From Octopus sinensis (lineage: Eukaryota): 64,000 nucleotides of DNA. Under the pieces are notes generated by a model that saw nothing but the letters and a program-made list of their open reading frames with translations, had not been told where the DNA came from and did no database searches. The stretch covers positions 139,376,001-139,440,000 of the forward strand of contig NC_042997.1 of assembly GCF_006345805.1 (NCBI RefSeq), written 5' to 3'. Each line of letters opens with the position of its first letter. Position 1 is the stretch's first letter. Below, piece after piece: positions 2,213 to 63,439 of the stretch. The translations under genes and the position numbers were made by a program.

Positions 2213-2444
2213 ATTCTTTTATTCTTTTATACTTTTATTCGTTTCAGTCATTTTGACTGCGGCCATGCTGGAGCGCCGCCTTTAGTCGAGCAAATCGATC
2301 TCAGAACTTATTCTTTGTAAGCCTAGTACTTGTTCTGTCGGTTTCTTATGTCGAACCGCTAAGTTACGGGGACGTAAACACACCAGCATCGGTTGTCAAG
2401 CGATGTTGAGGGGGACACACTCATACAAACATATACACACACAC

Positions 2445-2540
<96 letters not shown>

Positions 2541-2703
2541 GACAGGCTTCTTTCAGTTTCCGTCTACCAAATCCAGTCACAAAGCTTTGGTCGGCCGAGG
2601 GCTATAGTAGAAAACACTTGCCCAAGGTGCCACGCAGTGGGACTGAACTTGGAACTATGCGGTTGGTTAGCAAGCTACTGACCACACAGCCACACCTGCG
2701 CCT
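2213..2703 (-). mobile_element. tRNA-headed SINE family 1 (head - internal microsatellite - tail), full length
   Basis: Box A TGGCTGTGTGG and box B GTTCAGTCCC, central (TA)n(TG)n, tail GCTCCAGCATGGCCGCAGTC..(AAAAGAAT)n. Confidence 0.8.
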
Positions 2704-3104
2704 ATATGGTGAAAACCTCTTCAAAAAATATTTGATATAAATATGTGGTGTGGCTTTAAGTTACGAAAACAGAGGTGATCATTTTAACAAATCAAAATAT
2801 TTTTGTCATTTTAAGATATTTAGGATTTTGAGATATTTAACGGTATTTATTGTCTCGGTAGCTTAGTTTGATGGTACAAGGCACTTATCCAGAATTTGTA
2901 TCCAGAAATTTATAGGCACTGGCATATCGCAATTTACGTCAATATCTGATTCCAGTTATATGCGGCTAAACCCGTGAAAACGATGTAACACGAGAATAAA
3001 TACATTTCTAAAATTTCCTTAGGTTAATATCAGTTTTGATAGACGATTTTACATATTTTCATGCGTATTTTATTTGATTTTCCACTTCAGTATAAGTATT
3101 TATG

Positions 3105-13915: not shown

Positions 13916-15970
13916 TCATTTATATATATATATATATATATATTATATGTGTGTAAACATATATGTGTGCGTGTAAATAGCGTAAAGGAATAGGGATTTT
14001 GAGTTCAGGTAAGTACCTTACAAATATTCTGATGTAATATAGGCTCTGGTTAGCCACATCGAATGATCTGGAAAGCGGTCTCTTTTGTCGGGGATGTAGT
14101 CACACCAACACCAGTTATCAAGCGGTGATGGGGGACAAATACAGACACAAAGGCATACATACATACATACATACATACATACATACATACATACATACAT
14201 ACATACATACATACATACATGCAAACATACATACATACATACATACACACACACACATACATACATACATACATACATACATACATACATACATACATAC
14301 ATACATACATACATACATACATACATACATAAACATACATACATACATCCATACATACATCCATACATACATACATACATACATACATACATACATACAT
14401 ACATACATACATACATACATACATACATACATACATACATACATGTGTGTGTGTTTGTGTATACAATTGTCTTCTTTCAGTTTCCGTCTACCAAATCCAT
14501 TCATAAGGCTTTGGTGGGACCAAGACTATAGCAGAAGACACTTGCCTAAAGTGCCACCCAGAGGGACTGAACCCGGAACCATGTGGTTGAGAAGCAAGTT
14601 TCTTACTACAGAGTCATGCTTATTTCTTATCGATAGACTTTTATGTGTCCGTATATATACACATATATATAATCTCATTATTTTACCAATGTGTCATTTC
14701 TTAATATTGAGTAATAGGAAATTCTGAGGGAAATGTTTAGCAAGTAAGATGATTGCACACAGCCCTTCCTTTGAAGAAAAGCCATTCATCGATGGTCGCC
14801 ATGACACACCACAGTGGTGGTAATACTGGTTTCAAATTTTGGTACAAGGTCAGAAATTTGGGGGAAGGGGCTAAGTCGATAACATCGACCCCACTGTTGT
14901 ACTGGTACTTATTTTATCGACCTCGAAACGATGAAAGGCAGAGTTGACCTCGCGTGGAATTTGAACATTGCTATTAATATCGACAGCATAAGAGTCGCCG
15001 TTGTGGTTGAAATGACTCAGACTGATAGTTCTGATGACACTGTTCAGCTCAGTATCGCTTGTATTGAAACAGTTACGTTGTGGTTATAGTAATGATATAA
15101 CTCAGTGTTAGTTGCAATATTGTAAAAGTATTTATCACAAAACAGCTCAGCGGTGGTTTTAATGAAACAAATTAATTTTATTTTTTTAAATGACAGATTT
15201 ATATGCTGAATATTTAATTTTTATATATTATTTAGGATTTTTTTTTAATTTTATTCGAAAAGGAAAATCGTTTATCAAGTCCAATTGATTAGGCAGTGCT
15301 GGATGTAAAGCGAAGTCACTTTTCTTTTTCTTTAATTGTATGGGTATGAGAAGGAAACTAGTTTTCAGAAACTCCAGATACGGAAATGTGGTCAACAGAA
15401 TGAACAGATGAGTTGACATGTTGGGCTATGGGTATACGTTAAGTGTGGTGGGAAATTCTATGAAGCGGTCGCTGAAAACATTTACCTAAACTGCATCCCG
15501 TTTTATTTACGCAGAATTCATTGCAAACGTTGATTATGATAAATGCAGTGGCTGCAGTTGATACGGTAAAGGGGAAGATAGCTCAACGCTTGATTAACTT
15601 ACTACAGAAGTTGTGGTTGTGTTTGTTTAAGGAAAGAAGATAAATGTGACATTTGGAATGGGAAACCTTGCAGGCATCAGGCAGTGTATGGTTGAGAGCA
15701 GTGAACTTCGAATATGAATGTCGCAAGGATTTCTACGCTTTTTTGAAGAAGGGAAGAAATGATATGAGAAAATTGAGGCGGTTAGGGACTCAGAGAGAAG
15801 AAATCGAAGGTTATGCTGAAAGAGCTTTAATGAAAGGGTTGAGTTTTAAATGGTTTTAAAAAAGTTGAATTATTCGAGTATAATTATGTGAATGTATGCA
15901 TACGTATGTATACATGTGTATACATATGTGTGTGTAGATATAGATAGACAGATATACACATGTATATATA

Positions 15971-17397: not shown

Positions 17398-17836
17398 GTG
17401 TATATATATATATATATATATTATATATAATACATTTTGGTGGGAGGGAGTGGAATAGTGGATTTTGAAGCACACATAAATATATAGGTATCAGCGTGTG
17501 AATATTGGGTTGGAATAACCTGTTTGACAGTGAAAGTCGGAAATGTGGGATCATCTCCCACAGGAACTTTCGACTTTTTCTCTCCAAAAGGGATTTTCAA
17601 ACCAATATTTACATGCTATTATTTATAGTTTCATGCGGGATTATAGATCCACAATTCACACACACACACACATACACACGCACGCGTATGTATGTATGTA
17701 TGTATGTATGTATGTATGTATGTATGTATGTATATTCGTATCTGCTTCCGAATGTATTAATGGTTGACAGGATATTATCAAGGCATAACTTTAGTTGAAG
17801 AAGCGCTTGAAACGCTGACGTTGACGTAGCTAACAT

Positions 17837-17936
17837 TTAAATGAAAACACGTATAACGGTAAGAATCAACACAAGTAGAAGAGCAGTTTGTTTCAGCGGT
17901 GGAGCGGCGGCTACACGGCAGCGGATTGAATCAAAT
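17837..17936 (-). CDS. Terminal coding exon G: last EGF Cys + GPI-anchor-like signal, stop TAA
   Basis: ttttcattacag|A TTT GAT ... ATT TAA. Encodes (R)FDSIRCRVAAAPPLKQTALLLVLILTVIRVFI*. It supplies the sixth EGF Cys and the phase fits exon F. Confidence 0.85.
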
Positions 17937-17984
17937 CTGTAATGAAAAAAAAAATGGCAGAAATTAAAACAAAGATACATTGTT

Positions 17985-18162
<178 letters not shown>

Positions 18163-18220
18163 TATTATTTATCACATCATCATCATCATCATCATCATTA
18201 TTATTATTATCATTATTATT

Positions 18221-18775
18221 GAGTGAGAGAGCAGTTCATGCCATCAAAGTGACACTGGGGTAAAATATACGAAGCCCAATATACCCATCATGACTACCCG
18301 TCTGATAAGGGGACACCAGGCACATGCATCACAACCATATGTGCGCGACATGGTGATCTCATATCAAGATAAACAGCACATGACCTTGCAGGTGGGGCCC
18401 AGTTAGAATTTTCTTCAGGTTGAGTAGCCCATCCCGCTCAAACGGTCCCTGAATAAGGGTTGTTTAAGGATGTTGAAAAAACCACCCATGTTTCCAGAGG
18501 TGAATTATTCAAACCCCAAAGAATCCCTCTCAACACATGGCTATGATGTCCCCCCACTACTTCTGCTCGTGATCAGAGATGCACATATCGTCAGCCACTA
18601 AGGGACATGCTCAACTGGTTAAGGTCAAACAACTGACAAGCAAATCTGTGGTATTGAGCAGAATATTTGCTGTAGCCCATCTTTTATACCAAGTCAAAAC
18701 AATGTACATGATAACACTTCCAATCAGTTAAGATCAGAAGCCATGAGAGCCACTGCCTGGTACTGCATCAGGGCA
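18221..18775 (-). mobile_element. Dispersed ~550 bp repeat ending CTCTCTCACTC(AAT)n, probably a non-LTR retrotransposon 3' end (possibly R4/Dong-like); copy 1
   Basis: Highly similar copies at 33953-34335, 54114-54540 and 58211-58535; embedded in ATT/ATC microsatellites. Confidence 0.65.
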
Positions 18776-20778: not shown

Positions 20779-20933
20779 CTGTTTACTAGGCCTCTTTCTT
20801 TTCTTATGTACTCGAGTTCTAGAAGAGAACCTTCGATCCAGAACTTGCCATCGTTAATTGGATATTCAGTTCCTTGTTTGCAGTTGCAACGGTAAGAGCC
20901 AATGGTGAATGATAAATGTGCAAGCGGAGCACA
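20779..20933 (-). CDS. Coding exon F: EGF-like domain 2 (absent from the ORF track in this frame)
   Basis: ctcttgtag|TGT ... AAC AG|gtaaca. Encodes CAPLAHLSFTIGSYRCNCKQGTEYPINDGKFWIEGSLLELEYIRKERGLVN. Phase 0 to 2. Confidence 0.9.
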
Positions 20934-23603: not shown

Positions 23604-23718
23604 CGAGGTTGTTTCGGGACATCTTGCTGTGTTTTTGAAGGCATTGGCCACATAAAACGGCTGTGGACACTGGTTGATACGTAATAGCTTCAAAGGAATA
23701 TCGACTGTGACAACACCA
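23604..23718 (-). CDS. Coding exon E: end of Cache module 2 / start of EGF-like domain 2
   Basis: ctattgtag|T GGT ... TCG|gtaaag. Encodes (N)GVVTVDIPLKLLRINQCPQPFYVANAFKNTARCPETTS. Phase 2 to 0. Confidence 0.92.
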
Positions 23719-24910: not shown

Positions 24911-25925
24911 TTGAATATAACTGTTGTTCGTAATTCATCAATTCCAAAAAACGGTACTGCGTATGTAACAACCCATTTATTTACAAAGCCATCACATCGG
25001 AAATAAGGCCGTGTCCAAAAACCGTCCTTTAACATTGGTGCTTTGTATCTCATAGGATAATATTCGAAAGGAATATTGCTCGATCCATTGAAATCAGTTC
25101 GAACATGAGCCCTCATTTTGTAGGTTTTTAGTCCAAAGGTGTTCAGTTTCCAACGTTGCTTAGATTTTACAAACCAACCTTCTTCCATATAAGGCTTTTG
25201 TAGACCAGCACTGTCAATTGCACGATAGAGTCCTCTGTGGCGGAAAGCAAATGGTCCGAACAATTCCTTTACTTTAGTTTCGCTTTCTTTGAATACATAT
25301 TTATCAAAGAAAACACCTGAAGACATTATCCTAAAATCAGCCATCACATTAGCCACAACTTCCCCAAAGATTTGCTGAGGAATAAGTCGAGTACCCCCTT
25401 TATGATAACCGAAATTTTCATTAGGATTTGCATTTTGTAGGTAATTAGACAAGAAATGGGCCAATCGCAAAGCAGTCCTTGCTTGAAATTCAAACTGTGT
25501 TGAAACTCCATAACCAACATCACCTGGAAGCAAAAGGTTTTCAGGGACTACATTTTCACAGTTGTCTGAAGTTATCGAAGAGATTTTCTTAAAAAGCTTT
25601 TGGATTCTGAAAATTGATTTTTTGTCAATTAAACTTCTACGGAAACGAGAATGAAATTTACGTCTTTCTTTCACTTTTTTGCGGCTATCAGCTGCAAATT
25701 TTAGGACTTTTTCAGAGTCTAGAGAAAAGGAACTTGTTTCGGATGTAAACGGATTGAAAGTCATGTGAGTTTCATTATAATTAATGTTATAAGAGTTAAA
25801 GAAATTATGAAAAAAATTAGTCACAGAACGTTTCTTTCTCTCCCAAGTTGTAATACTCAATGTTGCTGCAAGTTCTTCTGCATTAACTTTTTGAAGATCT
25901 CGATTTGATGGTAAAACAGACCTAA
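24911..25925 (-). CDS. Coding exon D: furin-site linker + Cache-like module 2
   Basis: ttttcag|TT AGG ... TTC AA|gtaagt; 1015 nt open. Motifs ITSDNC, FEFQARTALRLAHFLSNYLQ, SSGVFFD and FWTRPYFRCDGFVNKWVVTYAVPFFG. Phase 1 to 2. Confidence 0.93.
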
Positions 25926-27169: not shown

Positions 27170-27335
27170 AGTCAGTTTTGGTGCATGAAAAACCATTTTT
27201 GTATTCTTCGTTTGTTGCTTTCTCAATATCAATTCCTCTCCAAGGTGGTTTCATTGAAACAGGGTACCGGTACCCAGGTCGACATGGACACGAGTAGCCT
27301 CCTCGCTTGAAACCCATTCCAGGAACATGTTTACA
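27170..27335 (-). CDS. Coding exon C: EGF-like domain 1
   Basis: ttatcag|TGT ... GAC T|gtaagt. Encodes CKHVPGMGFKRGGYSCPCRPGYRYP...FSCTKTD, the GPR158-like CxxxPGxGFxRGxYxCxCxxGY motif. Phase 0 to 1. Confidence 0.92.
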
Positions 27336-41355: not shown

Positions 41356-42520
41356 GTCATCCCAAAAGTTCTGTCCGATTTTACCTTTTTTAAAATTGAA
41401 TGAAATTTAATAGTATTTTAGAATGTCTAATGGAATTAAAAATTATTTTTATGCATTTGTGTACATTTAAATTAAGTAAATATTATTTTACAGAATAATA
41501 AGGCACATAATGCTTTAGGAGTACAAAAACGGAAATTCTGTTGCTGAAGCGACTCGAAACAGACACTCAGTTTATGGGAAAGAATGCCTGAAAAAAGATC
41601 TTGCAGGTGATGGTTTGCAAAATTAAGAAGTGGAGATTTCAACCTTGAAGATGAATATCGAACAGGACGTCCAGTTGAGTTTAATGATAAGCTCCTTGAG
41701 GCATTACTTGAAAAAAATCTGCGTTATCAGTTGAAGAATTGGCAATAAAACTTAATTCAAACCATACAACTGTTCATCGTCATCTTCAACAACTTGGAAA
41801 GCTTCCTAAACTTGGAAAATGGGTGCGTCATGAATTGACCGAAAGCAACCGCAAATCCCAAGTTGACATCTGCTCTTCTCTCCATTCTCACGAACTCATT
41901 TCACCCCTTTTGGATAGACTTGTGACTGGTAATGAAAAATGGATCTTCTATCGAAATGTTAAACGTCGTAAACAGTGGCTTGGTAAAAGGGAAAAAGCTC
42001 AACAACAACCGAGAAGGGAATTTCATGGAAAAAAGGTTCTTCTCTCTATCTAATGCAACAATCAATGCTCAAGTCTACTGACAGCAATTGGAGCGTTTGA
42101 ACCAAGCTTTGAAGAAAAAAAGACCTGCTTTAGTGAATCGAAAAGGAGTGGTGTTTCATCAGGACAATGCACGACCCCACACTGCAAAGATCACATTCCC
42201 AGAATATCGAAGAGCTTGGTTGGTAAAAAAAATTCCTCATCCACCTTATTCTCCCGACCTTGCTCTTTCGTAGTTTACAGAATCATTTGGGGGACATAAC
42301 TTTCGCAAGCCAGGAGGAGGTCGAAACTGACATTTCGGAGTTCTTCGCTTTGGAACCAAAATAGTTTTACATTTATGGGATTAAAAAGCTTGTAAATAGA
42401 TGGAAAGAAGTCATAGATAATCAGGGAAAGTACATTGATGATTAAATTTCAATCAAATATAGCATTTGATCACTTGTTTTCTTTTTTCAAAATTTGGACA
42501 GAACTTATGGGATGACCTGA
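41352..42520 (+). mobile_element. mariner (DD34D-type) transposon, near full length, pseudogenised
   Basis: TIRs TCAGGTCATCCCAAAAGTTCTGTCC / GGACAGAACTTATGGGATGACCTGA flanked by TA. Motifs GDFNLEDEYRTGRP, KWVRHEL, VTGNEKW, HQDNARPH and HPPYSPDLA. Confidence 0.92.
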
Positions 42521-44280: not shown

Positions 44281-44410
44281 CACAGTTGTTTTAGTCTTGC
44301 AGCGAGCAATCCCAGACAGATAGCTAGGTCCAGGGTTGCCAGTACTGACTGGACAGGCATTGAAGTCTATCTGTTTGAAATACATGTCCATCACTGACAG
44401 AGCTACTATT
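44281..44410 (-). CDS. Coding exon B: end of Cache module 1 / start of EGF-like domain 1
   Basis: ttccatag|A ... GTG|gtaagt. Encodes (R)IVALSVMDMYFKQIDFNACPVSTGNPGPSYLSGIARCKTKTTV, matching the family GVxxxDI...DINQC...C motif. Phase 2 to 0. Confidence 0.9.
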
Positions 44411-46771: not shown

Positions 46772-47339
46772 ATATATATATGGGTGGCAACTAAGTTCCT
46801 GCCATTTGTTTTTTTAAAATTTGGGAATTTATTACGCTTTTAAATCTTGGAATCTATTTTTTTCGAGAATTCTGTTTTTGAGTCATCTTGGAATCTTTTT
46901 TTTTCTAGTTAATTTTAGTTAATTTTTGTTTATTTTCAGTTCATTAAAATGGAATGTCAAGTTGAGAAAAACGAGTATTTTCGATGTGTTTGTGTGGCAA
47001 GAAGTTTGCTTCACAACTACATGGTACCGGGTTCAGTCCCACTGCGTGGCACTTTAGGTAAATGTCTTCTACTACAGACCGGGGTCGACTAAAGCCTTGT
47101 GAGTAGATTTGGTACACAAAAACTCAAAGAAGGCCGATGTATGTGTGTATGAGTATGCCTATATTTGTACCCCAGCACTGCTTGACAACCGGTGTTGAGT
47201 TTTTTGTCAGCTTAACTTAGTGATTCGGCAAATAGAATATGATCAAATAAGTACAATGTAGTGTCCTAGGATGGCCACAGTTCAATGACTGTTCGAAATA
47301 AAAATACTTATGTGTGCGTGGGGTGCATGTATATGTGTA

Positions 47340-51109: not shown

Positions 51110-51910
51110 ATAGGAGAAGGAAAGATCCAGAGAAGGGAAGACAGAGGGGAAAAAATTGCCAACGGTACACACGCGGTCACAATAATCAAACTTAATACAA
51201 GTCAAAAGTTAAATAATATTGTTAAATAAAACACATTACTTGGCTTGTCGGTGAAAATAATATAACTGAATTTTAAACGTAAAAATGTAGGTCTTAGCGT
51301 TTATAAGAAATTAAACTCGTGAAGACGTTGTGTAAAAAAAATAGAATAAAATTATCAATGAAAATGACGAAAATTATTTATTAATGAAAAAGACGAAAAA
51401 TATTTAAGCTTCATGAATTAAAGAAAAATAGAATAACAAAAGAACGATAAATGACTGCTTACTATAAATTAAGTTCCAAATAATTATTACGTAAAATATA
51501 CATATAATATTAAATTAAAATATATTAATATAACTAATAGGTCTTAATAAAATTATATATCATCATTTATGTATTAAGAAATATCTAAATTTAAAATTGT
51601 TCAAATATATTAACATAACATATAATAATACGGTAAATTACTCTAATACTATTAAATTATATCTACAAGATATAAATAACATAAAAAGAAATAAGGTTTT
51701 ATAAATACAGAAAAATAAGTTAAACGTATTATATAGGTAAATAAATTTATGTTAGCATTTAATTTTAAATGACTATTTACTATAAATTTAAAGTCTAAAT
51801 AATAAGTGAGTAAAATATATATACTATATTTAAATTAATTTATATTACTATAATTAATATATCTTAATAAATTTATATAATCATTTATTTATAAGCTAAA
51901 CTTATTATAT

Positions 51911-52330
51911 AGGCGCAGGAGTGGCTGTGTGGTAAGTAGCTTGCTAACCAACCACATGGTTCCGGGTTCAGTCACACTGCGTGGCATCTTGGGCAAGTGT
52001 CTTCTGCTATGGCCCCGGGCCGACCAATGCCTTGTGAGTGGATTTGGTAGACGGAAACTGAAAGAGGCCTGTCGTATATATGTATATATATATATATATG
52101 TGTGTGTGTGTTTGTGCGTCTGTGTTTGTCCCCCTAGCATTGCTTGACAACCGATGCTGGTGTGTTTATGTCCCCGTTACCTAGCGGTTCGGCAAAAGAG
52201 ACCGATAGAATAAGTACTGGGCTTACAAAGAATAAGTCCCGGGGTCGATTTGCTCGACTAAAGGCGGTGCTCCAGCATGGCCGCAGTCAAATGACTGAAA
52301 CAAGTAAAATAGTAAAGAGTAAAAGAGTAT
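51911..52330 (+). mobile_element. SINE family 1, full length; other copies at about 14095-14610 (-), 46990-47300 (+), 49655-49825 (+), 58715-58825 (+), 6686-6790 (+) and 9164-9262 (+)
   Basis: Same head, microsatellite and tail organisation as 2213-2703. Confidence 0.8.
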
Positions 52331-52362: not shown

Positions 52363-52942
52363 TTACATTCCTTCAATGAGATTACCAACACAATTGTTAT
52401 TAAATAATATTTTTTTGAATTCTTTATTATACAATGAACAATAATTACTCCCTATACAATATGATTTAGCCCTACAAATAATCTCCCAAGTTAATTTATA
52501 TTTAATAGATCTAGATTTAAGGTCCCAAATATATTTACTGAGACCTGTTGAATTTATTAGATTTTTATTCCTAATAGAATACATATGTTGAGATACTCTT
52601 GATTTAATTTTATTCGAAGTGGACCCTATATAAATAGTGTTTAAATTATGATAATATAAATTCTTACTATCTATTAAAGTTACCATTCACTTATAGACTA
52701 CATTCATGAAGCTTAAATATTTTTCGTCTTTTTCATTAATAAATATTTTTCGTCATTTTCATTGATAATTTTATTCTATTTTTTTATACACAACGTCTTC
52801 ACGAGTTTAATTTCTTATAAACGCTAAGTCCTACATTTTTACGTTTAAAATTCAGTTATATTATTTTCATCGACAAGCTAAGTAACGTTTTTTATTTAAC
52901 AATATTATTTAACTTTTGAATTGTATTAAGTTTGATTATTAT
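52363..52942 (-). mobile_element. Penelope-like GIY-YIG endonuclease fragment, very AT-rich
   Basis: NVVYK*MVT..IYIGSTSNKIKSRVSQH..NSTGLSKYIWDLK..LTWEIICRAKSY..CSL. Confidence 0.8.
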
Positions 52943-56000: not shown

Positions 56001-56953
56001 CTCGGTCGACGAATATGAGTCCAGTTAACAAACCGATACATGTAATCCATAACTGGCGAAACGGAAGATATAATCCATTGGTTTGATTTACCACAATCCA
56101 TATATGGTTGTGTAAAATAAACCGGAAGTGGAATTTTTCCAGCTGTCTGACCAGGTTGACTTGGTCCAAAGAATGAATCAACACTATATTCCTGAGAAGT
56201 AAACGCTCCTGTATAATTGGAATATTTAAAACCAATATTGTAAGAGAATTTAGTAAGAGAATCCATACTACTCGAAGTATCAGGAAGTTCATAAACATTG
56301 TACCAAGGTGTTGTCTTTGAGGAAGGATCAGTATAATTGTGATTACTTGCACCAAAATCTTTGATCATTACTGTTTGTAAGGTCATCTCTCGAAGATAAT
56401 TATCTGAATCTCTTGAATCATCCCATCGCCAGGCAGACGGACCAAATAAAGGCAATGTTGTATTAAATTTGTACGGGTCCAACCAATTGGGATAAGAACA
56501 GTTATAGTCATAAAATAAACTGCTGCCGTTCAGACTAAATGGATTAGCATTGACATCAGCAACTGCTGACATATACATATACATCCAGCCTGGCAAACTG
56601 GGAAAATCACTCTTAGATTCATTGAATTTTTGTAGCATGTAGCTATGGAAATATGCTCTGTTTAATGCCATATTATGAAGATGCAAGAGTTTCGTGCGAT
56701 TTTTATACATGACCTTGCTCAAAAGTTCATTGTATTTTGGCAGCTGAGATACGACGTCTGCTCTCACAGTTAACTGGTCTCTCGATTTGCCTCTGCAGTT
56801 CTGCGGCGTGATTGCCGTAATTTTATCCTGTATTTCGTCGTAGTTATCATATTTCATCCATTCGAATTCTCCAGAAGTGTATGTTGTATACAAGAATACA
56901 ACAAACAGACAAGCTAGATGAAAGCTCACAGTACTGATTAACGTTTTCGCCAT
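56001..56953 (-). CDS. Coding exon A: signal peptide + Cache-like module 1 (aa 1-318)
   Basis: ATG at 56953 (AAGATGG). Hydrophobic MAKTLISTVSFHLACLFVVFLYTTYTSG. GPR158-type motifs ITPQNC and FTQPYMDCGKSNQWIISSVSPV. Acceptor tattttcag at 56990-56991, donor AG|gtaaga at 56000 (phase 2). Confidence 0.92.
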
Positions 56954-60532: not shown

Positions 60533-60925
60533 ACTTTTCACTTCCCGAGCGTTATACTAATACATCTGTTTGCTGTCTACGCCACCTGTCTTCGTCTTTT
60601 GTTTCTTGCTTTTTTTGTGAATTCTCCCTATACACACACACACACACACATATATATATATGGACATGAATACATGAACACACACACACATATATATATA
60701 CATATACACTATGTATTTAATGTGGAATATGTGGTGTTCGTTCACCGAAACATACGTAACATTGGTTTCACTTTTCTTTTCCGCAATTTGCGATTGTTAT
60801 AATCTCTTAAGATTATAACATGCCCTTATAATATACTGCCTTGGAATTGACTGATTGTTTCATTAATAATTGATCAAAGTATAACTAATCAGTCATCAGA
60901 TAATCAAAAATAATGTTTTCGCTTC

Positions 60926-61137
60926 CACGAGGGTAAGTTCCTAGCTTTGGGTAAGAGAAAATACAAGAGGATCAGTTAATTATGATTTTATTCAACATAT
61001 TCCCCTCTCAGATTCACACACTTATTTCAGCGGTCCTTCAGTTTTTCTAAGCCTTGTAAAAAGCTCGGAAGATGGCGCCTTCAACCAGGCCTTTCGCGAT
61101 GCCTATAAAGCCAGGAACTTTTCAGCACCACCTCGTA
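60926..61137. mobile_element. mariner-type MITE (copy 1)
   Basis: Right end AAAGCCAGGAACTTTTCAGCACCACCTCG|TA is an imperfect inverted match to left CACGAGGGTAAGTTCCTAGCTTT. Confidence 0.55.
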
Positions 61138-61701
61138 TCTATCTATCTATATGTCTGTCTGAACAAATCGACCACTGTACTTATTTTATAAAGCCTGGCA
61201 CCTATTTCTTTTGCCTAACTGCTGAATTACAGAAGCACGAACAAACCAGTATTTGGTTATAAAGTGAGCTTCATAACCATACAGCCATGCCTGCACCTTT
61301 TATAAAAAAAAACACGTTCCCGCCCAGTGTAATATTGGGAAAGAATGTAGGGTAAGAATAACAAACAATTAAGTATACAAAAAGACCTACACACACTGAT
61401 GCATATGTCACACTTTTGTATATCTTTATAAATACACATGTATTCGTGCCTCTTACAACACACAGTGGCAAATATACAATCATAAACGCATTTATACTTA
61501 AACACATACACACAATAAATCTCACAATAATTGGTACATACACACACACACACACACACACTAGCTTTTCACTTCCTATAGAAAAAATTATAATAACAAT
61601 GTTATTGATCAATATATCACACATCGTTGACTACGTAGCTTAAAACCCAAAACAACCGTCTCAACACTTGATATACAGCTTCGCCTACACACACAGACAC
61701 G

Positions 61702-61745
<44 letters not shown>

Positions 61746-62066
61746 CGGACAGACAGACAGACAGATACATACACACACACAACACACACATATATATATA
61801 TGGACATGAATACATGAACACACACACACATATATATATATACATATACACTATGTATTTAATGTGGAATATGTGGTGTTCGTTCACCGAAACATACGTA
61901 ACATTGGTTTCACTTTTCTTTTCCGCAATTTGCGATTGTTATAATCTCTTAAGATTATAACATGCCCTTATAATATACTGCCTTGGAATGACTGATTGTT
62001 TCATTAATAATTGATCAAAGTATAACTAATCAGTCATCAGATAATCAAAAATAATGTTTTCGCTTC

Positions 62067-62277
62067 CACGAGGTAAGTTCCTAGCTTTGGGTAAGAGAAA
62101 ATACAAGAGGATCAGTTAATTATGATTTTATTCAACATATTCCCCTCTCAGATTCACACACTTATTTCAGCGGTCCTTCAGTTTTTCTAAGCCTTGTAAA
62201 AAGCTCGGAAGATGGCGCCTTCAACCAGGCCTTTCGCGATGCCTATAAAGCCAGGAACTTTTCAGCACCACCTCGTA
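62067..62277. mobile_element. mariner-type MITE (copy 2, inside the tandem duplication)
   Basis: Near-identical to 60926-61137. Confidence 0.55.
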
Positions 62278-62844
62278 TCTATCTATCTATATGTCTGTCT
62301 GAACAAATCGACCACTGTACTTATTTTATAAAGCCTGGCACCTATTTCTTTTGCCTAACTGCTGAATTACAGAAGCACGAACAAACCAGTATTTGGTTAT
62401 AAAGTGAGCTTCATAACCATACAGCCATGCCTGCACCTTTTATAAAAAAAAACACGTTCCCGCCCAGTGTAATATTGGGAAAGAATGTAGGGTAAGAATA
62501 ACAAACAATTAAGTATACAAAAAGACCTACACACACTGATGCATATGTCACACTTTTGTATATCTTTATAAATACACATGTATTCGTGCCTCTTACAACA
62601 CACAGTGGCAAATATACAATCATAAACGCATTTATACTTAAACACATACACACAATAAATCTCACAATAATTGGTACATACACACACACCACACACACAC
62701 ACACTAGCTTTTCACTTCCTATAGAAAAAATTATAATAACAATGTTATTGATCAATATATCACACATCGTTGACTACGTAGCTTAAAACCCAAAACAACC
62801 GTCTCAACACTTGATATACAGCTTCGCCTACACACACAGACACG

Positions 62845-62888
<44 letters not shown>

Positions 62889-62907
62889 CGGACAGACAGA
62901 CAGACAG

Positions 62908-62938
<31 letters not shown>

Positions 62939-63439
62939 ATAATAATGTCATAAAAAATACATAGACGTAGATAAATATTTCCCAGTTATACAGAATAAAT
63001 ATTTTGAACTAAACGATTTAACAACAGGGCTCAATAACGGTGAAAAAGAGAGAAATTTAGGGCGATAATTACAGGGTGTTCGGCCTTAACTTGGCGATTC
63101 TTTTATATCTTTCTTCGGGAACAGCTTAGTATTGGTGAACAATCGATAGTGTTGGAGAGCATAAAGATTAAAGTTGTAGTTTAGGATAAGTTATCTGGCA
63201 TGGAGGACTGGAAGTTACCTGAATATTGGAAAATATTTCCCTGTTCTATGATAATTCGCTCCAGGTATCGAAATACCGACATCATGACTGATGTTCCACG
63301 TTCTGTGAACACAGTAAACGCTGTAAGGCATGATACGTACAGCTTCAACGGACTGTGTGATATCATGGCCGCAGGAAGAGACACAGCAGACCATCCGCCT
63401 GTGTCCGCACGCCTGAATTCATCACTGCATCTTTGAACA

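What the first reader, a model, noticed from the sequence alone, without database searches (positions are those of the whole stretch)
17837..17936. Terminal exon encodes a GPI-anchor signal where TM1 should start
Seen: after the last EGF Cys (C851) come RVAAAPPLKQT and a 15-residue hydrophobic tail (ALLLVLILTVIRVFI), then a stop with no cytosolic tail. Known: a small-residue triplet, a ~8-10 aa spacer and a hydrophobic end is the GPI transamidase signal. Inference: omega site near A854.
Basis: partly seen in the sequence, partly recalled or inferred. Interest (0 to 1): 0.72.

Follow-up and report, generated by a model that had tools for sequence, protein, structure and literature searches.

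The report
GPI-anchor signal ends GPR158-like protein
The last exon of this mollusc gene does encode a textbook GPI-anchor signal, so a protein made of two copies of the ligand-binding outer part of the glycine receptor GPR158 is probably tethered to the cell surface by a lipid instead of a seven-helix membrane domain, and the same ending is conserved in relatives from at least seven invertebrate phyla.

Summary
On the minus strand, 17936-17837 is a canonical last coding exon (cag|A...TAA). It reads (R)FDSIRC851-RVAAAPPLKQT-ALLLVLILTVIRVFI-stop.

The exon closes a 7-exon, 877-aa gene (56953-17837). The protein has a signal peptide and two tandem GPR158/179-type ectodomain units (Cache fold plus a 6-Cys EGF-like linker). 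It has no 7TM domain: no 7TM exon lies anywhere in the window, including the 17.8 kb downstream.

The model aligns end to end with 800-980-aa uncharacterised proteins of molluscs, flatworms, crustaceans and a nematomorph. Partial or more divergent relatives occur in a priapulid and a rotifer.

Across 35 distinct relatives, the sequence after the conserved ...FDxLxCR is 25-32 aa in 31 cases. It is small at CR+2 (33/35) and at CR+4 (35/35), and 30 of 36 tails pass a simple GPI rule. That pattern is a GPI omega/omega+2 signature, and it places omega at A854.

The intron position and phase before this exon are identical in two gastropods. The 7TM relatives instead continue with a 4-Cys loop and then TM1.

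GPI anchoring itself remains a prediction, at about 0.75. I found no transcript for this gene's 3' end, and no dedicated GPI predictor was available. No searchable paper describes the family.

The parts
17837..17936 (-). Terminal coding exon (exon 7). It holds the third base of R845, then F846-I877, then the stop TAA at 17839-17837. It encodes the last EGF-like Cys and the whole predicted GPI signal.
   Evidence: The motif RFDxxxCR matches the Gigantopelta and Candidula homologues. Intron position and phase are conserved.
17918..17920 (-). Codon of C851, the sixth and last Cys of the EGF-like linker of unit 2.
   Evidence: last Cys = 851. Six Cys lie between NQC and RC, matching the three disulfides of the EGF-like part of GPR158 (PMC8611064).
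17903..17911 (-). Codons A854-A855-A856, the predicted omega, omega+1 and omega+2 residues.
   Evidence: Family-wide, CR+2 is small in 33/35 tails and CR+4 in 35/35.
17885..17902 (-). Spacer P857-T862 (PPLKQT).
17840..17884 (-). Hydrophobic C-terminal segment A863-I877 (ALLLVLILTVIRVFI). The best 12-residue Kyte-Doolittle mean is 3.07, and the segment contains one Arg at 874.
20779..20933 (-). Exon 6: the EGF-like part of unit 2 (CAPLAH...GLVN, plus the first two bases of R845).
   Evidence: tblastn to P0004 and P0012, E 1e-14 and 2e-11. Splice sites.
23604..23718 (-). Exon 5: the end of Cache unit 2 and the start of the Cys-rich linker (GVVTVDIPLKLLRINQCPQPFYVANAFKNTARCPETTS).
24911..25925 (-). 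Exon 4: the inter-unit linker plus the Cache domain of unit 2.
   Evidence: It is 90% identical to P0001 over the 219-residue query (84% over the whole exon). It is 73% identical to the spliced Argonauta hians model P0036.
27170..27335 (-). Exon 3: the EGF-like part of unit 1 (CKHVPGMGF...FSCTKTD). It splices in frame, in phase 1, to exon 4.
   Evidence: Pfam EGF_CA matches residues 355-384 weakly. The Argonauta model confirms the junction.
44281..44410 (-). Exon 2: the end of Cache unit 1 and the start of its Cys-rich linker (IVALSVMDMYFKQIDFNACPVSTGNPGPSYLSGIARCKTKTTV).
   Evidence: Found by the phase-constrained scan. It is 74-84% identical to the corresponding exons in L001 and L003, and it is present in Argonauta P0036.
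56001..56953 (-). Exon 1: the start codon, the signal peptide (M1 to about G27, 56953-56873) and the Cache domain of unit 1.
   Evidence: It is 53% identical to an unannotated exon upstream of the Gigantopelta gene.

Best explanation
The exon is the true 3' coding end of a gene for a secreted-pathway protein. That protein is built from two tandem GPR158/179-type ectodomain units, each a Cache fold followed by a 6-Cys EGF-like linker. The exon supplies a GPI attachment signal. Inferred mechanism: the N-terminal signal peptide takes the chain into the ER. The C-terminal hydrophobic segment A863-I877 holds it transiently in the membrane. The GPI transamidase then cleaves after A854 and transfers the protein to a preformed GPI. 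The mature protein, about residues 28-854, would sit on the outer leaflet and display two Cache pockets, with no 7TM domain and no cytoplasmic part. Shown here: the gene structure, the domain identity, the absence of 7TM coding sequence in the window, and conservation of the tail architecture and of the intron position. Inferred: the cleavage site, lipid anchoring, and function. The likeliest function is a membrane-tethered ligand-binding co-receptor or adhesion partner that must signal through another protein.
For: The 877-aa gene model has canonical splice sites. Pfam GPR158_179_EC matches twice, E 4e-41. PDB sequence hits are to GPR158 and GPR179. A Cache fold is confirmed on a homologue model, with GPR179, GPR158 and bacterial dCache sensors as top hits. 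The model aligns end to end at 34-48% identity with annotated 820-982-aa proteins of Gigantopelta, Pecten, Argopecten, Octopus bimaculoides, Biomphalaria, Macrostomum, Schistosoma and Gordionus. Homologues end 25-32 residues after the conserved CR, and 30 of 36 distinct tails pass a simple GPI rule. CR+2 is small in 33/35 and CR+4 in 35/35, against a background of 0.32. Apart from these small positions the tails share little sequence, which is what attachment signals look like. Full-length homologues occur on about 2.8-3.5 kb Logan contigs, a size that fits spliced mRNAs. A phase-2 intron sits directly before RFD in Gigantopelta and Candidula, as it does here. No 7TM similarity was found in the window, best E 1.7.
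Against: No dedicated GPI predictor could be run. I found no transcript or spliced protein for exons 6-7 of this gene or of a close orthologue. The Argonauta orthologue model stops at exon 6. No AATAAA or ATTAAA lies within 2 kb of the stop. The tail is strongly hydrophobic (KD 3.07), and very hydrophobic tails can stay as membrane anchors. Some relatives end in basic residues (RRH, CRR), as a short cytosolic stub would. For the alpha2delta Cache proteins, the role of a similar predicted GPI motif has been questioned experimentally (PMC3112168, title and abstract only). The family counts are not phylogenetically independent.
Confidence: 0.75

Rival explanations
1. The hydrophobic end is not removed. 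It acts as a short single-pass (type I) membrane anchor with essentially no cytoplasmic tail.
For: The tail is very hydrophobic, with a 12-residue KD mean of 3.07. R874, and the terminal basic residues in some relatives (RRH, CRR, QR), could act as a stop-transfer flank. An alpha2delta paper reports lipid-raft targeting independent of the predicted GPI motif (PMC3112168, title and abstract only).
Against: Only 11 uninterrupted hydrophobic residues are present, 15 if the Arg is counted, and that is short for a bilayer span. A plain anchor would have no need for the nearly invariant small residues at CR+2 and CR+4. Tail length is held at 25-32 residues across phyla.
Confidence: 0.13
2. The exon is not the constitutive end. 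The gene is a GPR158-like receptor whose 7TM exons lie further downstream or outside the window, and this exon is an alternative truncating end.
For: No transcript evidence exists for this gene's 3' end. No nearby poly(A) signal was found. Introns in this gene reach 17 kb, so distant exons are conceivable.
Against: tblastn with eight 7TM domains of relatives finds nothing in the window, best E 1.7, including the 17.8 kb downstream. No good donor site lies inside the exon. Homologues in seven or more phyla stop at the same place. The 4-Cys loop that precedes TM1 in the receptors is absent. True GPR158-like receptors exist as separate genes in molluscs, for example in Mytilus.
Confidence: 0.03
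3. The gene is a decaying or unexpressed paralogue, or the protein is simply secreted or degraded because the signal is inefficient.
For: The Octopus entry I retrieved (LOC106873574) is only 45% identical, so it looks like a paralogue. No spliced transcript-derived protein of this gene was found.
Against: All seven exons are open and all splice sites are intact. The gene is 73% identical to the Argonauta orthologue with no frameshift, and exon 4 is 84-90% identical in another octopod-like sample. All six Cys of each linker are kept.
Confidence: 0.09

Closest known systems
GPR158 (mGlyR) and GPR179, class C orphan GPCRs
   Same: The ectodomain module is the same: a Cache fold followed by a 6-Cys EGF-like linker. 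Evidence is Pfam PF22572 at E 4e-41, PDB hits 7ewl, 7she and 8d1b, and fold hits 8irj, 8d1b and 7ewl.
   Different: There are two tandem ectodomain units instead of one. The 4-Cys 'D loop' that contacts ECL2 is missing (PMC8611064). There is no 7TM domain and no cytoplasmic RGS-binding tail. The chain ends in a GPI-type signal.
Uncharacterised protostome proteins labelled 'GPR158/179 extracellular domain-containing protein'. Examples are Octopus bimaculoides LOC106873574, Pecten maximus LOC117337530, Biomphalaria glabrata LOC106058717 and Gigantopelta aegis LOC121389272.
   Same: They are colinear over the whole length at 44-48% identity. They share the two-unit architecture, the RFDxLxCR motif and the C-terminal tail.
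   Different: The window's gene is a distinct paralogue or orthologue. Its closest annotated relative is a partial Argonauta hians model named after LOC106882646, at 73% identity. None of these proteins has a described function or a reported anchor.
Voltage-gated calcium channel alpha2delta subunits and CACHD1
   Same: They are metazoan extracellular Cache-domain proteins. They carry a short hydrophobic C-terminus, once read as a TM helix and later proposed to be a GPI signal. They act as auxiliary or ligand-binding partners of membrane proteins (PMC9901441 and PMC3112168, titles and abstracts only; the history of the TM versus GPI reading is from my own knowledge).
   Different: Pfam finds no VWA domain here. 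The Cache subtype differs and an EGF-like linker is present. There is no significant sequence relationship, so this is an analogy only.
GPI-anchored ligand-binding co-receptors such as GFRalpha and CNTFRalpha (from general knowledge)
   Same: The logic is the same: a ligand-binding ectodomain held by a GPI anchor that must signal through a separate transmembrane partner.
   Different: The folds are unrelated, and no partner is known here.

Membership tests
GPR158/179 class C GPCRs | Cache-type ligand-binding ectodomain | tested here: met
   PF22572 matches at E 4e-41 in two stretches. phmmer hits GPR158 and GPR179 chains. Foldseek on a homologue model hits GPR179, GPR158 and bacterial dCache sensors.
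GPR158/179 class C GPCRs | EGF-like Cys-rich linker with three disulfides | tested here: met
   Each unit has six Cys in the conserved pattern. Pfam EGF_CA and EGF_3 match weakly. The disulfide pairing itself was not tested.
GPR158/179 class C GPCRs | 4-Cys spiral 'D loop' between the EGF-like part and TM1 | tested here: not met
   Receptor relatives continue PCxxGCxxCxDxxPC after the conserved Cys. The window protein continues RVAAAPP... (PMC8611064).
GPR158/179 class C GPCRs | Seven-transmembrane domain | tested here: not met
   The coding sequence stops 26 residues after C851. tblastn with eight 7TM domains gives a best E of 1.7 in the window.
GPI-anchored proteins (C-terminal attachment signal) | N-terminal ER signal peptide | tested here: met
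   The N-terminus MAKTLISTVSFHLACLFVVFLYTTYTSG|EFEW has a hydrophobic core and small residues at -3 and -1 (by inspection). Homologues also start with hydrophobic leaders. No SignalP run was possible.
GPI-anchored proteins (C-terminal attachment signal) | Small residues at omega and omega+2, and no Pro at omega+1 | tested here: met
   A854, A855 and A856 fit. The same positions are small in 33/35 and 35/35 relatives.
GPI-anchored proteins (C-terminal attachment signal) | Polar spacer of about 5-10 residues, then a hydrophobic C-terminus of about 10-20 residues with no cytosolic tail | tested here: met
   The spacer PPLKQT has 6 residues. The tail ALLLVLILTVIRVFI has 15 residues, including one Arg, and the stop follows directly.
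GPI-anchored proteins (C-terminal attachment signal) | Positive score from a trained predictor (NetGPI, PredGPI or big-PI) | not testable with these tools
   No such predictor was available. Only a rule-based tally was made.
GPI-anchored proteins (C-terminal attachment signal) | Release by PI-PLC and dependence on GPI biosynthesis | not testable with these tools
   This is an experiment.
Two-unit 'GPR158/179 extracellular domain-containing' proteins of protostomes | Colinear two-unit architecture that ends 25-32 residues after the RFDxLxCR motif | tested here: met
   blastp covers residues 5-877 against proteins of 820-982 aa. The window's tail is 25 residues.
Two-unit 'GPR158/179 extracellular domain-containing' proteins of protostomes | Tail on its own last exon, behind a phase-2 intron inside the Arg codon before FD | tested here: met
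   The junction ...AG|gt ... cag|A TTT GA is identical in the window, in Gigantopelta (L001) and in Candidula (L002).
alpha2delta / CACHD1 | VWA domain plus two dCache_1 domains | tested here: not met
   Pfam finds no VWA or VGCC_alpha2 match. The only fold hit to alpha2delta is marginal, E 0.13 over 47 columns.

The most novel reading that the evidence does not exclude
The gene belongs to an ancient, protostome-wide and so far undescribed class of lipid-anchored double-Cache receptors. In this reading, 7TM-less versions of the metabotropic glycine receptor ectodomain bind small ligands (amino acids) or matrix partners at the cell surface. They would act as co-receptors, decoys or trans-synaptic partners for the 7TM GPR158-type receptors or for other signalling proteins, much as GFRalpha or alpha2delta do in their own systems.
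Probability: 0.3. Interest if true: 0.7.

Novelty: new variant of a known kind. Interest (0 to 1): 0.55.

Why it matters
GPR158 was recently identified as a metabotropic glycine receptor, and its Cache ectodomain is the only one of that kind fused to an animal GPCR. A conserved family that keeps this ectodomain in duplicate, drops the 7TM and the loop that couples to it, and replaces them with a GPI-type signal would show that the module can work without its own transducer. It would also give invertebrate neurobiology, including cephalopods and schistosomes, a new class of candidate surface sensors or co-receptors. On the practical side, public gene models of this family are often truncated. 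The Gigantopelta LOC121389271 model lacks unit 1, and the Argonauta model lacks exons 1 and 7. The anchor is therefore easy to miss.

Tried and rejected
(1) I considered a candidate unit-1 middle exon at 55178-55035 (..VGVRLRLNQC..). I rejected it because it has no acceptor and lies in GT-rich repeat. The real exon is 44410-44281.

I used a profile of two homologues instead.

(3) I searched for spliced proteins spanning exons 5-7 of this gene or of close orthologues. Only three distant or fragmentary hits came back, none with the tail.

(4) The related cephalopod-like contig L003 holds exons 2-5, but the fetched 21 kb does not reach exons 6-7. Conservation of the tail in a close relative therefore could not be tested.

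(5) A poly(A) signal scan found none within 2 kb of the stop. This is uninformative.

(6) I wanted to compare the glycine-pocket residues of GPR158, but the Laboute 2023 paper is not held, so I dropped the comparison. From the alignment alone, GPR158 E271 aligns with R726 here. I could not verify that E271 is a ligand-binding residue.

(7) I considered reading the locus as two adjacent genes, one per unit. I rejected this because exon 3 splices in frame to exon 4, the Argonauta model joins them, and full-length homologues are colinear.

Full report
OBSERVATION. The window is AT-rich, microsatellite-laden animal DNA. The closest protein matches are octopod and other mollusc sequences. On the minus strand, 17936-17837 follows a strong acceptor (cattttttttttcattacag|A). 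It reads (R)FDSIRCRVAAAPPLKQTALLLVLILTVIRVFI and then TAA.

GENE MODEL. I rebuilt the gene independently. Stop-to-stop reading frames, tblastn with homologues and a phase-constrained exon scan give seven minus-strand exons:
- exon 1: 56953-56001
- exon 2: 44410-44281
- exon 3: 27335-27170
- exon 4: 25925-24911
- exon 5: 23718-23604
- exon 6: 20933-20779
- exon 7: 17936-17837

All have canonical AG/GT sites. A partial Argonauta hians model is 73% identical and joins exons 2-3-4-5-6 exactly as I did. Exons 1-3 also sit, unannotated, upstream of the truncated Gigantopelta model.

WHAT THE PROTEIN IS. Pfam finds GPR158_179_EC twice (E 4e-41) and weak EGF matches. The only solved relatives by sequence are GPR158 and GPR179. 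An AlphaFold model of a homologous unit has a confident Cache core (pLDDT about 90 over residues 1-245). Its best fold matches are bacterial dCache sensors, GPR179 and GPR158.

The protein is therefore a signal peptide followed by two tandem units, each a Cache domain plus a 6-Cys EGF-like linker. Jeong et al. (PMC8611064) describe the GPR158 linker as an EGF-like part with three disulfides, followed by a spiral 'D loop' with two disulfides that contacts ECL2 of the 7TM. Each unit here has six Cys, so it has the EGF-like part only.

NO 7TM. Eight 7TM domains of receptor-type relatives give nothing in the window (best E 1.7), although 17.8 kb lies downstream of the stop. The exon contains no good internal donor.

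THE FAMILY. A profile search found 634 relatives. The best are 800-980-aa proteins whose second unit ends at the C-terminus. The window model aligns with them from about residue 5 to 877 at 34-48% identity. They come from these groups:
- molluscs: Octopus, Gigantopelta, Biomphalaria, Pecten, Argopecten, Solemya, Aplysia
- flatworms: Schistosoma, Macrostomum
- crustaceans: Palaemon, Halocaridina, Eurytemora
- a nematomorph, a priapulid and a rotifer

A tardigrade relative appears among the profile hits, but its C-terminal tail was not examined. All carry names such as 'uncharacterized' or 'GPR158/179 extracellular domain-containing protein'. True 7TM GPR158-like receptors exist separately in the same phyla, for example in Mytilus.

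THE TAIL ACROSS THE FAMILY. I aligned everything to the conserved ...[RK][FY][DE]xLxCR motif.
- In 31 of 35 distinct tails, 25-32 residues follow before the stop. The window has 25.
- 30 of 36 distinct tails pass a simple rule: a small omega and omega+2 near the start, plus a hydrophobic 12-mer that ends within 8 residues of the C-terminus.
- Position CR+2 is G, A or S in 33/35 tails. CR+4 is small in 35/35 (Ala in 26). The background frequency of small residues is 0.32.
- The rest of the tail shares little sequence. That combination is the signature of a GPI attachment signal.

Receptor-type relatives instead continue PCxxGCxxCxDxxPC, and TM1 begins about 25 residues after the Cys. The lipid-anchor form has therefore lost both the coupling loop and the 7TM. 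Its hydrophobic run begins about 14 residues earlier than TM1 would.

EXON CONSERVATION. In Gigantopelta (L001) and Candidula (L002) the tail is also a separate last exon. It lies behind a phase-2 intron inside the Arg codon (...AG|gt ... cag|A TTT GA.), exactly as in the window. Several full-length homologues sit on 2.8-3.5 kb Logan contigs, a size that fits spliced mRNAs ending with this tail.

MECHANISM. What is shown: the structure of the gene, the domain identity, the absence of 7TM coding sequence, and the conserved signal-like C-terminus. What is inferred:
- ER entry through the N-terminal leader
- transamidase cleavage after A854 and GPI transfer
- display of two Cache pockets on the outer leaflet
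- signalling, if any, through a partner protein

CAVEATS.
- No trained GPI predictor was available.
- I found no transcript evidence for this gene's 3' end.
- No poly(A) signal lies within 2 kb of the stop.
- The tail is very hydrophobic and carries R874.
- Some relatives end in basic residues.
- For alpha2delta, another Cache protein, the role of a similar predicted GPI motif has been questioned experimentally (PMC3112168, title and abstract only).

I put GPI anchoring at about 0.75, a short uncleaved anchor at about 0.13, an unexpressed or inefficient product at about 0.09, and a hidden 7TM continuation at about 0.03.

COMPARISON AND NOVELTY. The protein is a member of the GPR158/179 ectodomain superfamily. 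It is not a GPR158-type GPCR, because two defining features, the D loop and the 7TM, were tested and not met. It belongs to a conserved two-unit family that exists in databases only as uncharacterised entries. Full-text searches found no paper linking GPR158-like proteins with a GPI anchor; every co-occurrence concerned glypicans. The nearest functional analogies are alpha2delta and CACHD1 (Cache proteins with a predicted GPI-type end) and GPI-anchored co-receptors such as GFRalpha. I rate it a new variant of a known kind and moderately interesting: the computational case is solid and the biology is untested.

Noticed in passing
window 17985-18225 and 17670-17735: Long (ATC)n/(ATT)n microsatellites lie in the last intron, only about 50 bp upstream of the terminal exon's acceptor. 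(CA)n/(TGTA)n arrays lie about 100 nt downstream of the stop. A mechanical ORF (17837-18175, minus strand) reads through the repeats as poly-D/N/I/M into the real exon. ORF-based callers would therefore produce an artefactual protein here.
   Followed up: partly
window 41739-42053 (+), inside intron 2: A remnant of a mariner-type transposase (Pfam Transposase_1, E 2.6e-6).
   Followed up: partly
window 52363-52686 (-), inside intron 1: A 107-aa ORF with a weak GIY-YIG match (E 8.6e-4, below Pfam's cut-off). It may be a Penelope-like element remnant.
   Followed up: partly
window about 60678-61820 and 61820-62960: A tandem duplication of about 1.14 kb at 99-100% identity. It lies 4-6 kb upstream of the gene's start codon. 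It may be a recent duplication or an assembly artefact.
   Followed up: partly
window 2393-2740, 14490-14700, 46920-47090, 51880-52180: A recurring short element gives similar translated strings (..RGTLGKCLLL....FSFRLPNP..) next to microsatellites. It looks like a dispersed SINE-like repeat.
   Followed up: no
L001 4329-8435 (Gigantopelta aegis CM027803.1); P0036 (Argonauta hians): Public gene models of this family are truncated. Exons 1-3 (unit 1) lie unannotated upstream of LOC121389271. The Argonauta model lacks exon 1 and the tail exon.
   Followed up: partly
window 15163-15831 (-): The first AATAAA or ATTAAA motifs after the stop occur only 2.0-2.7 kb downstream. This suggests a long 3' UTR or a non-canonical poly(A) signal.
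   Followed up: no
P0069 (1010 aa, Logan) and P0204 (Schistosoma mattheei, 1075 aa): A few relatives carry about 147 further residues after the conserved CR instead of a 25-32-residue tail. These could be alternative ends or model errors. I did not examine them.
   Followed up: no
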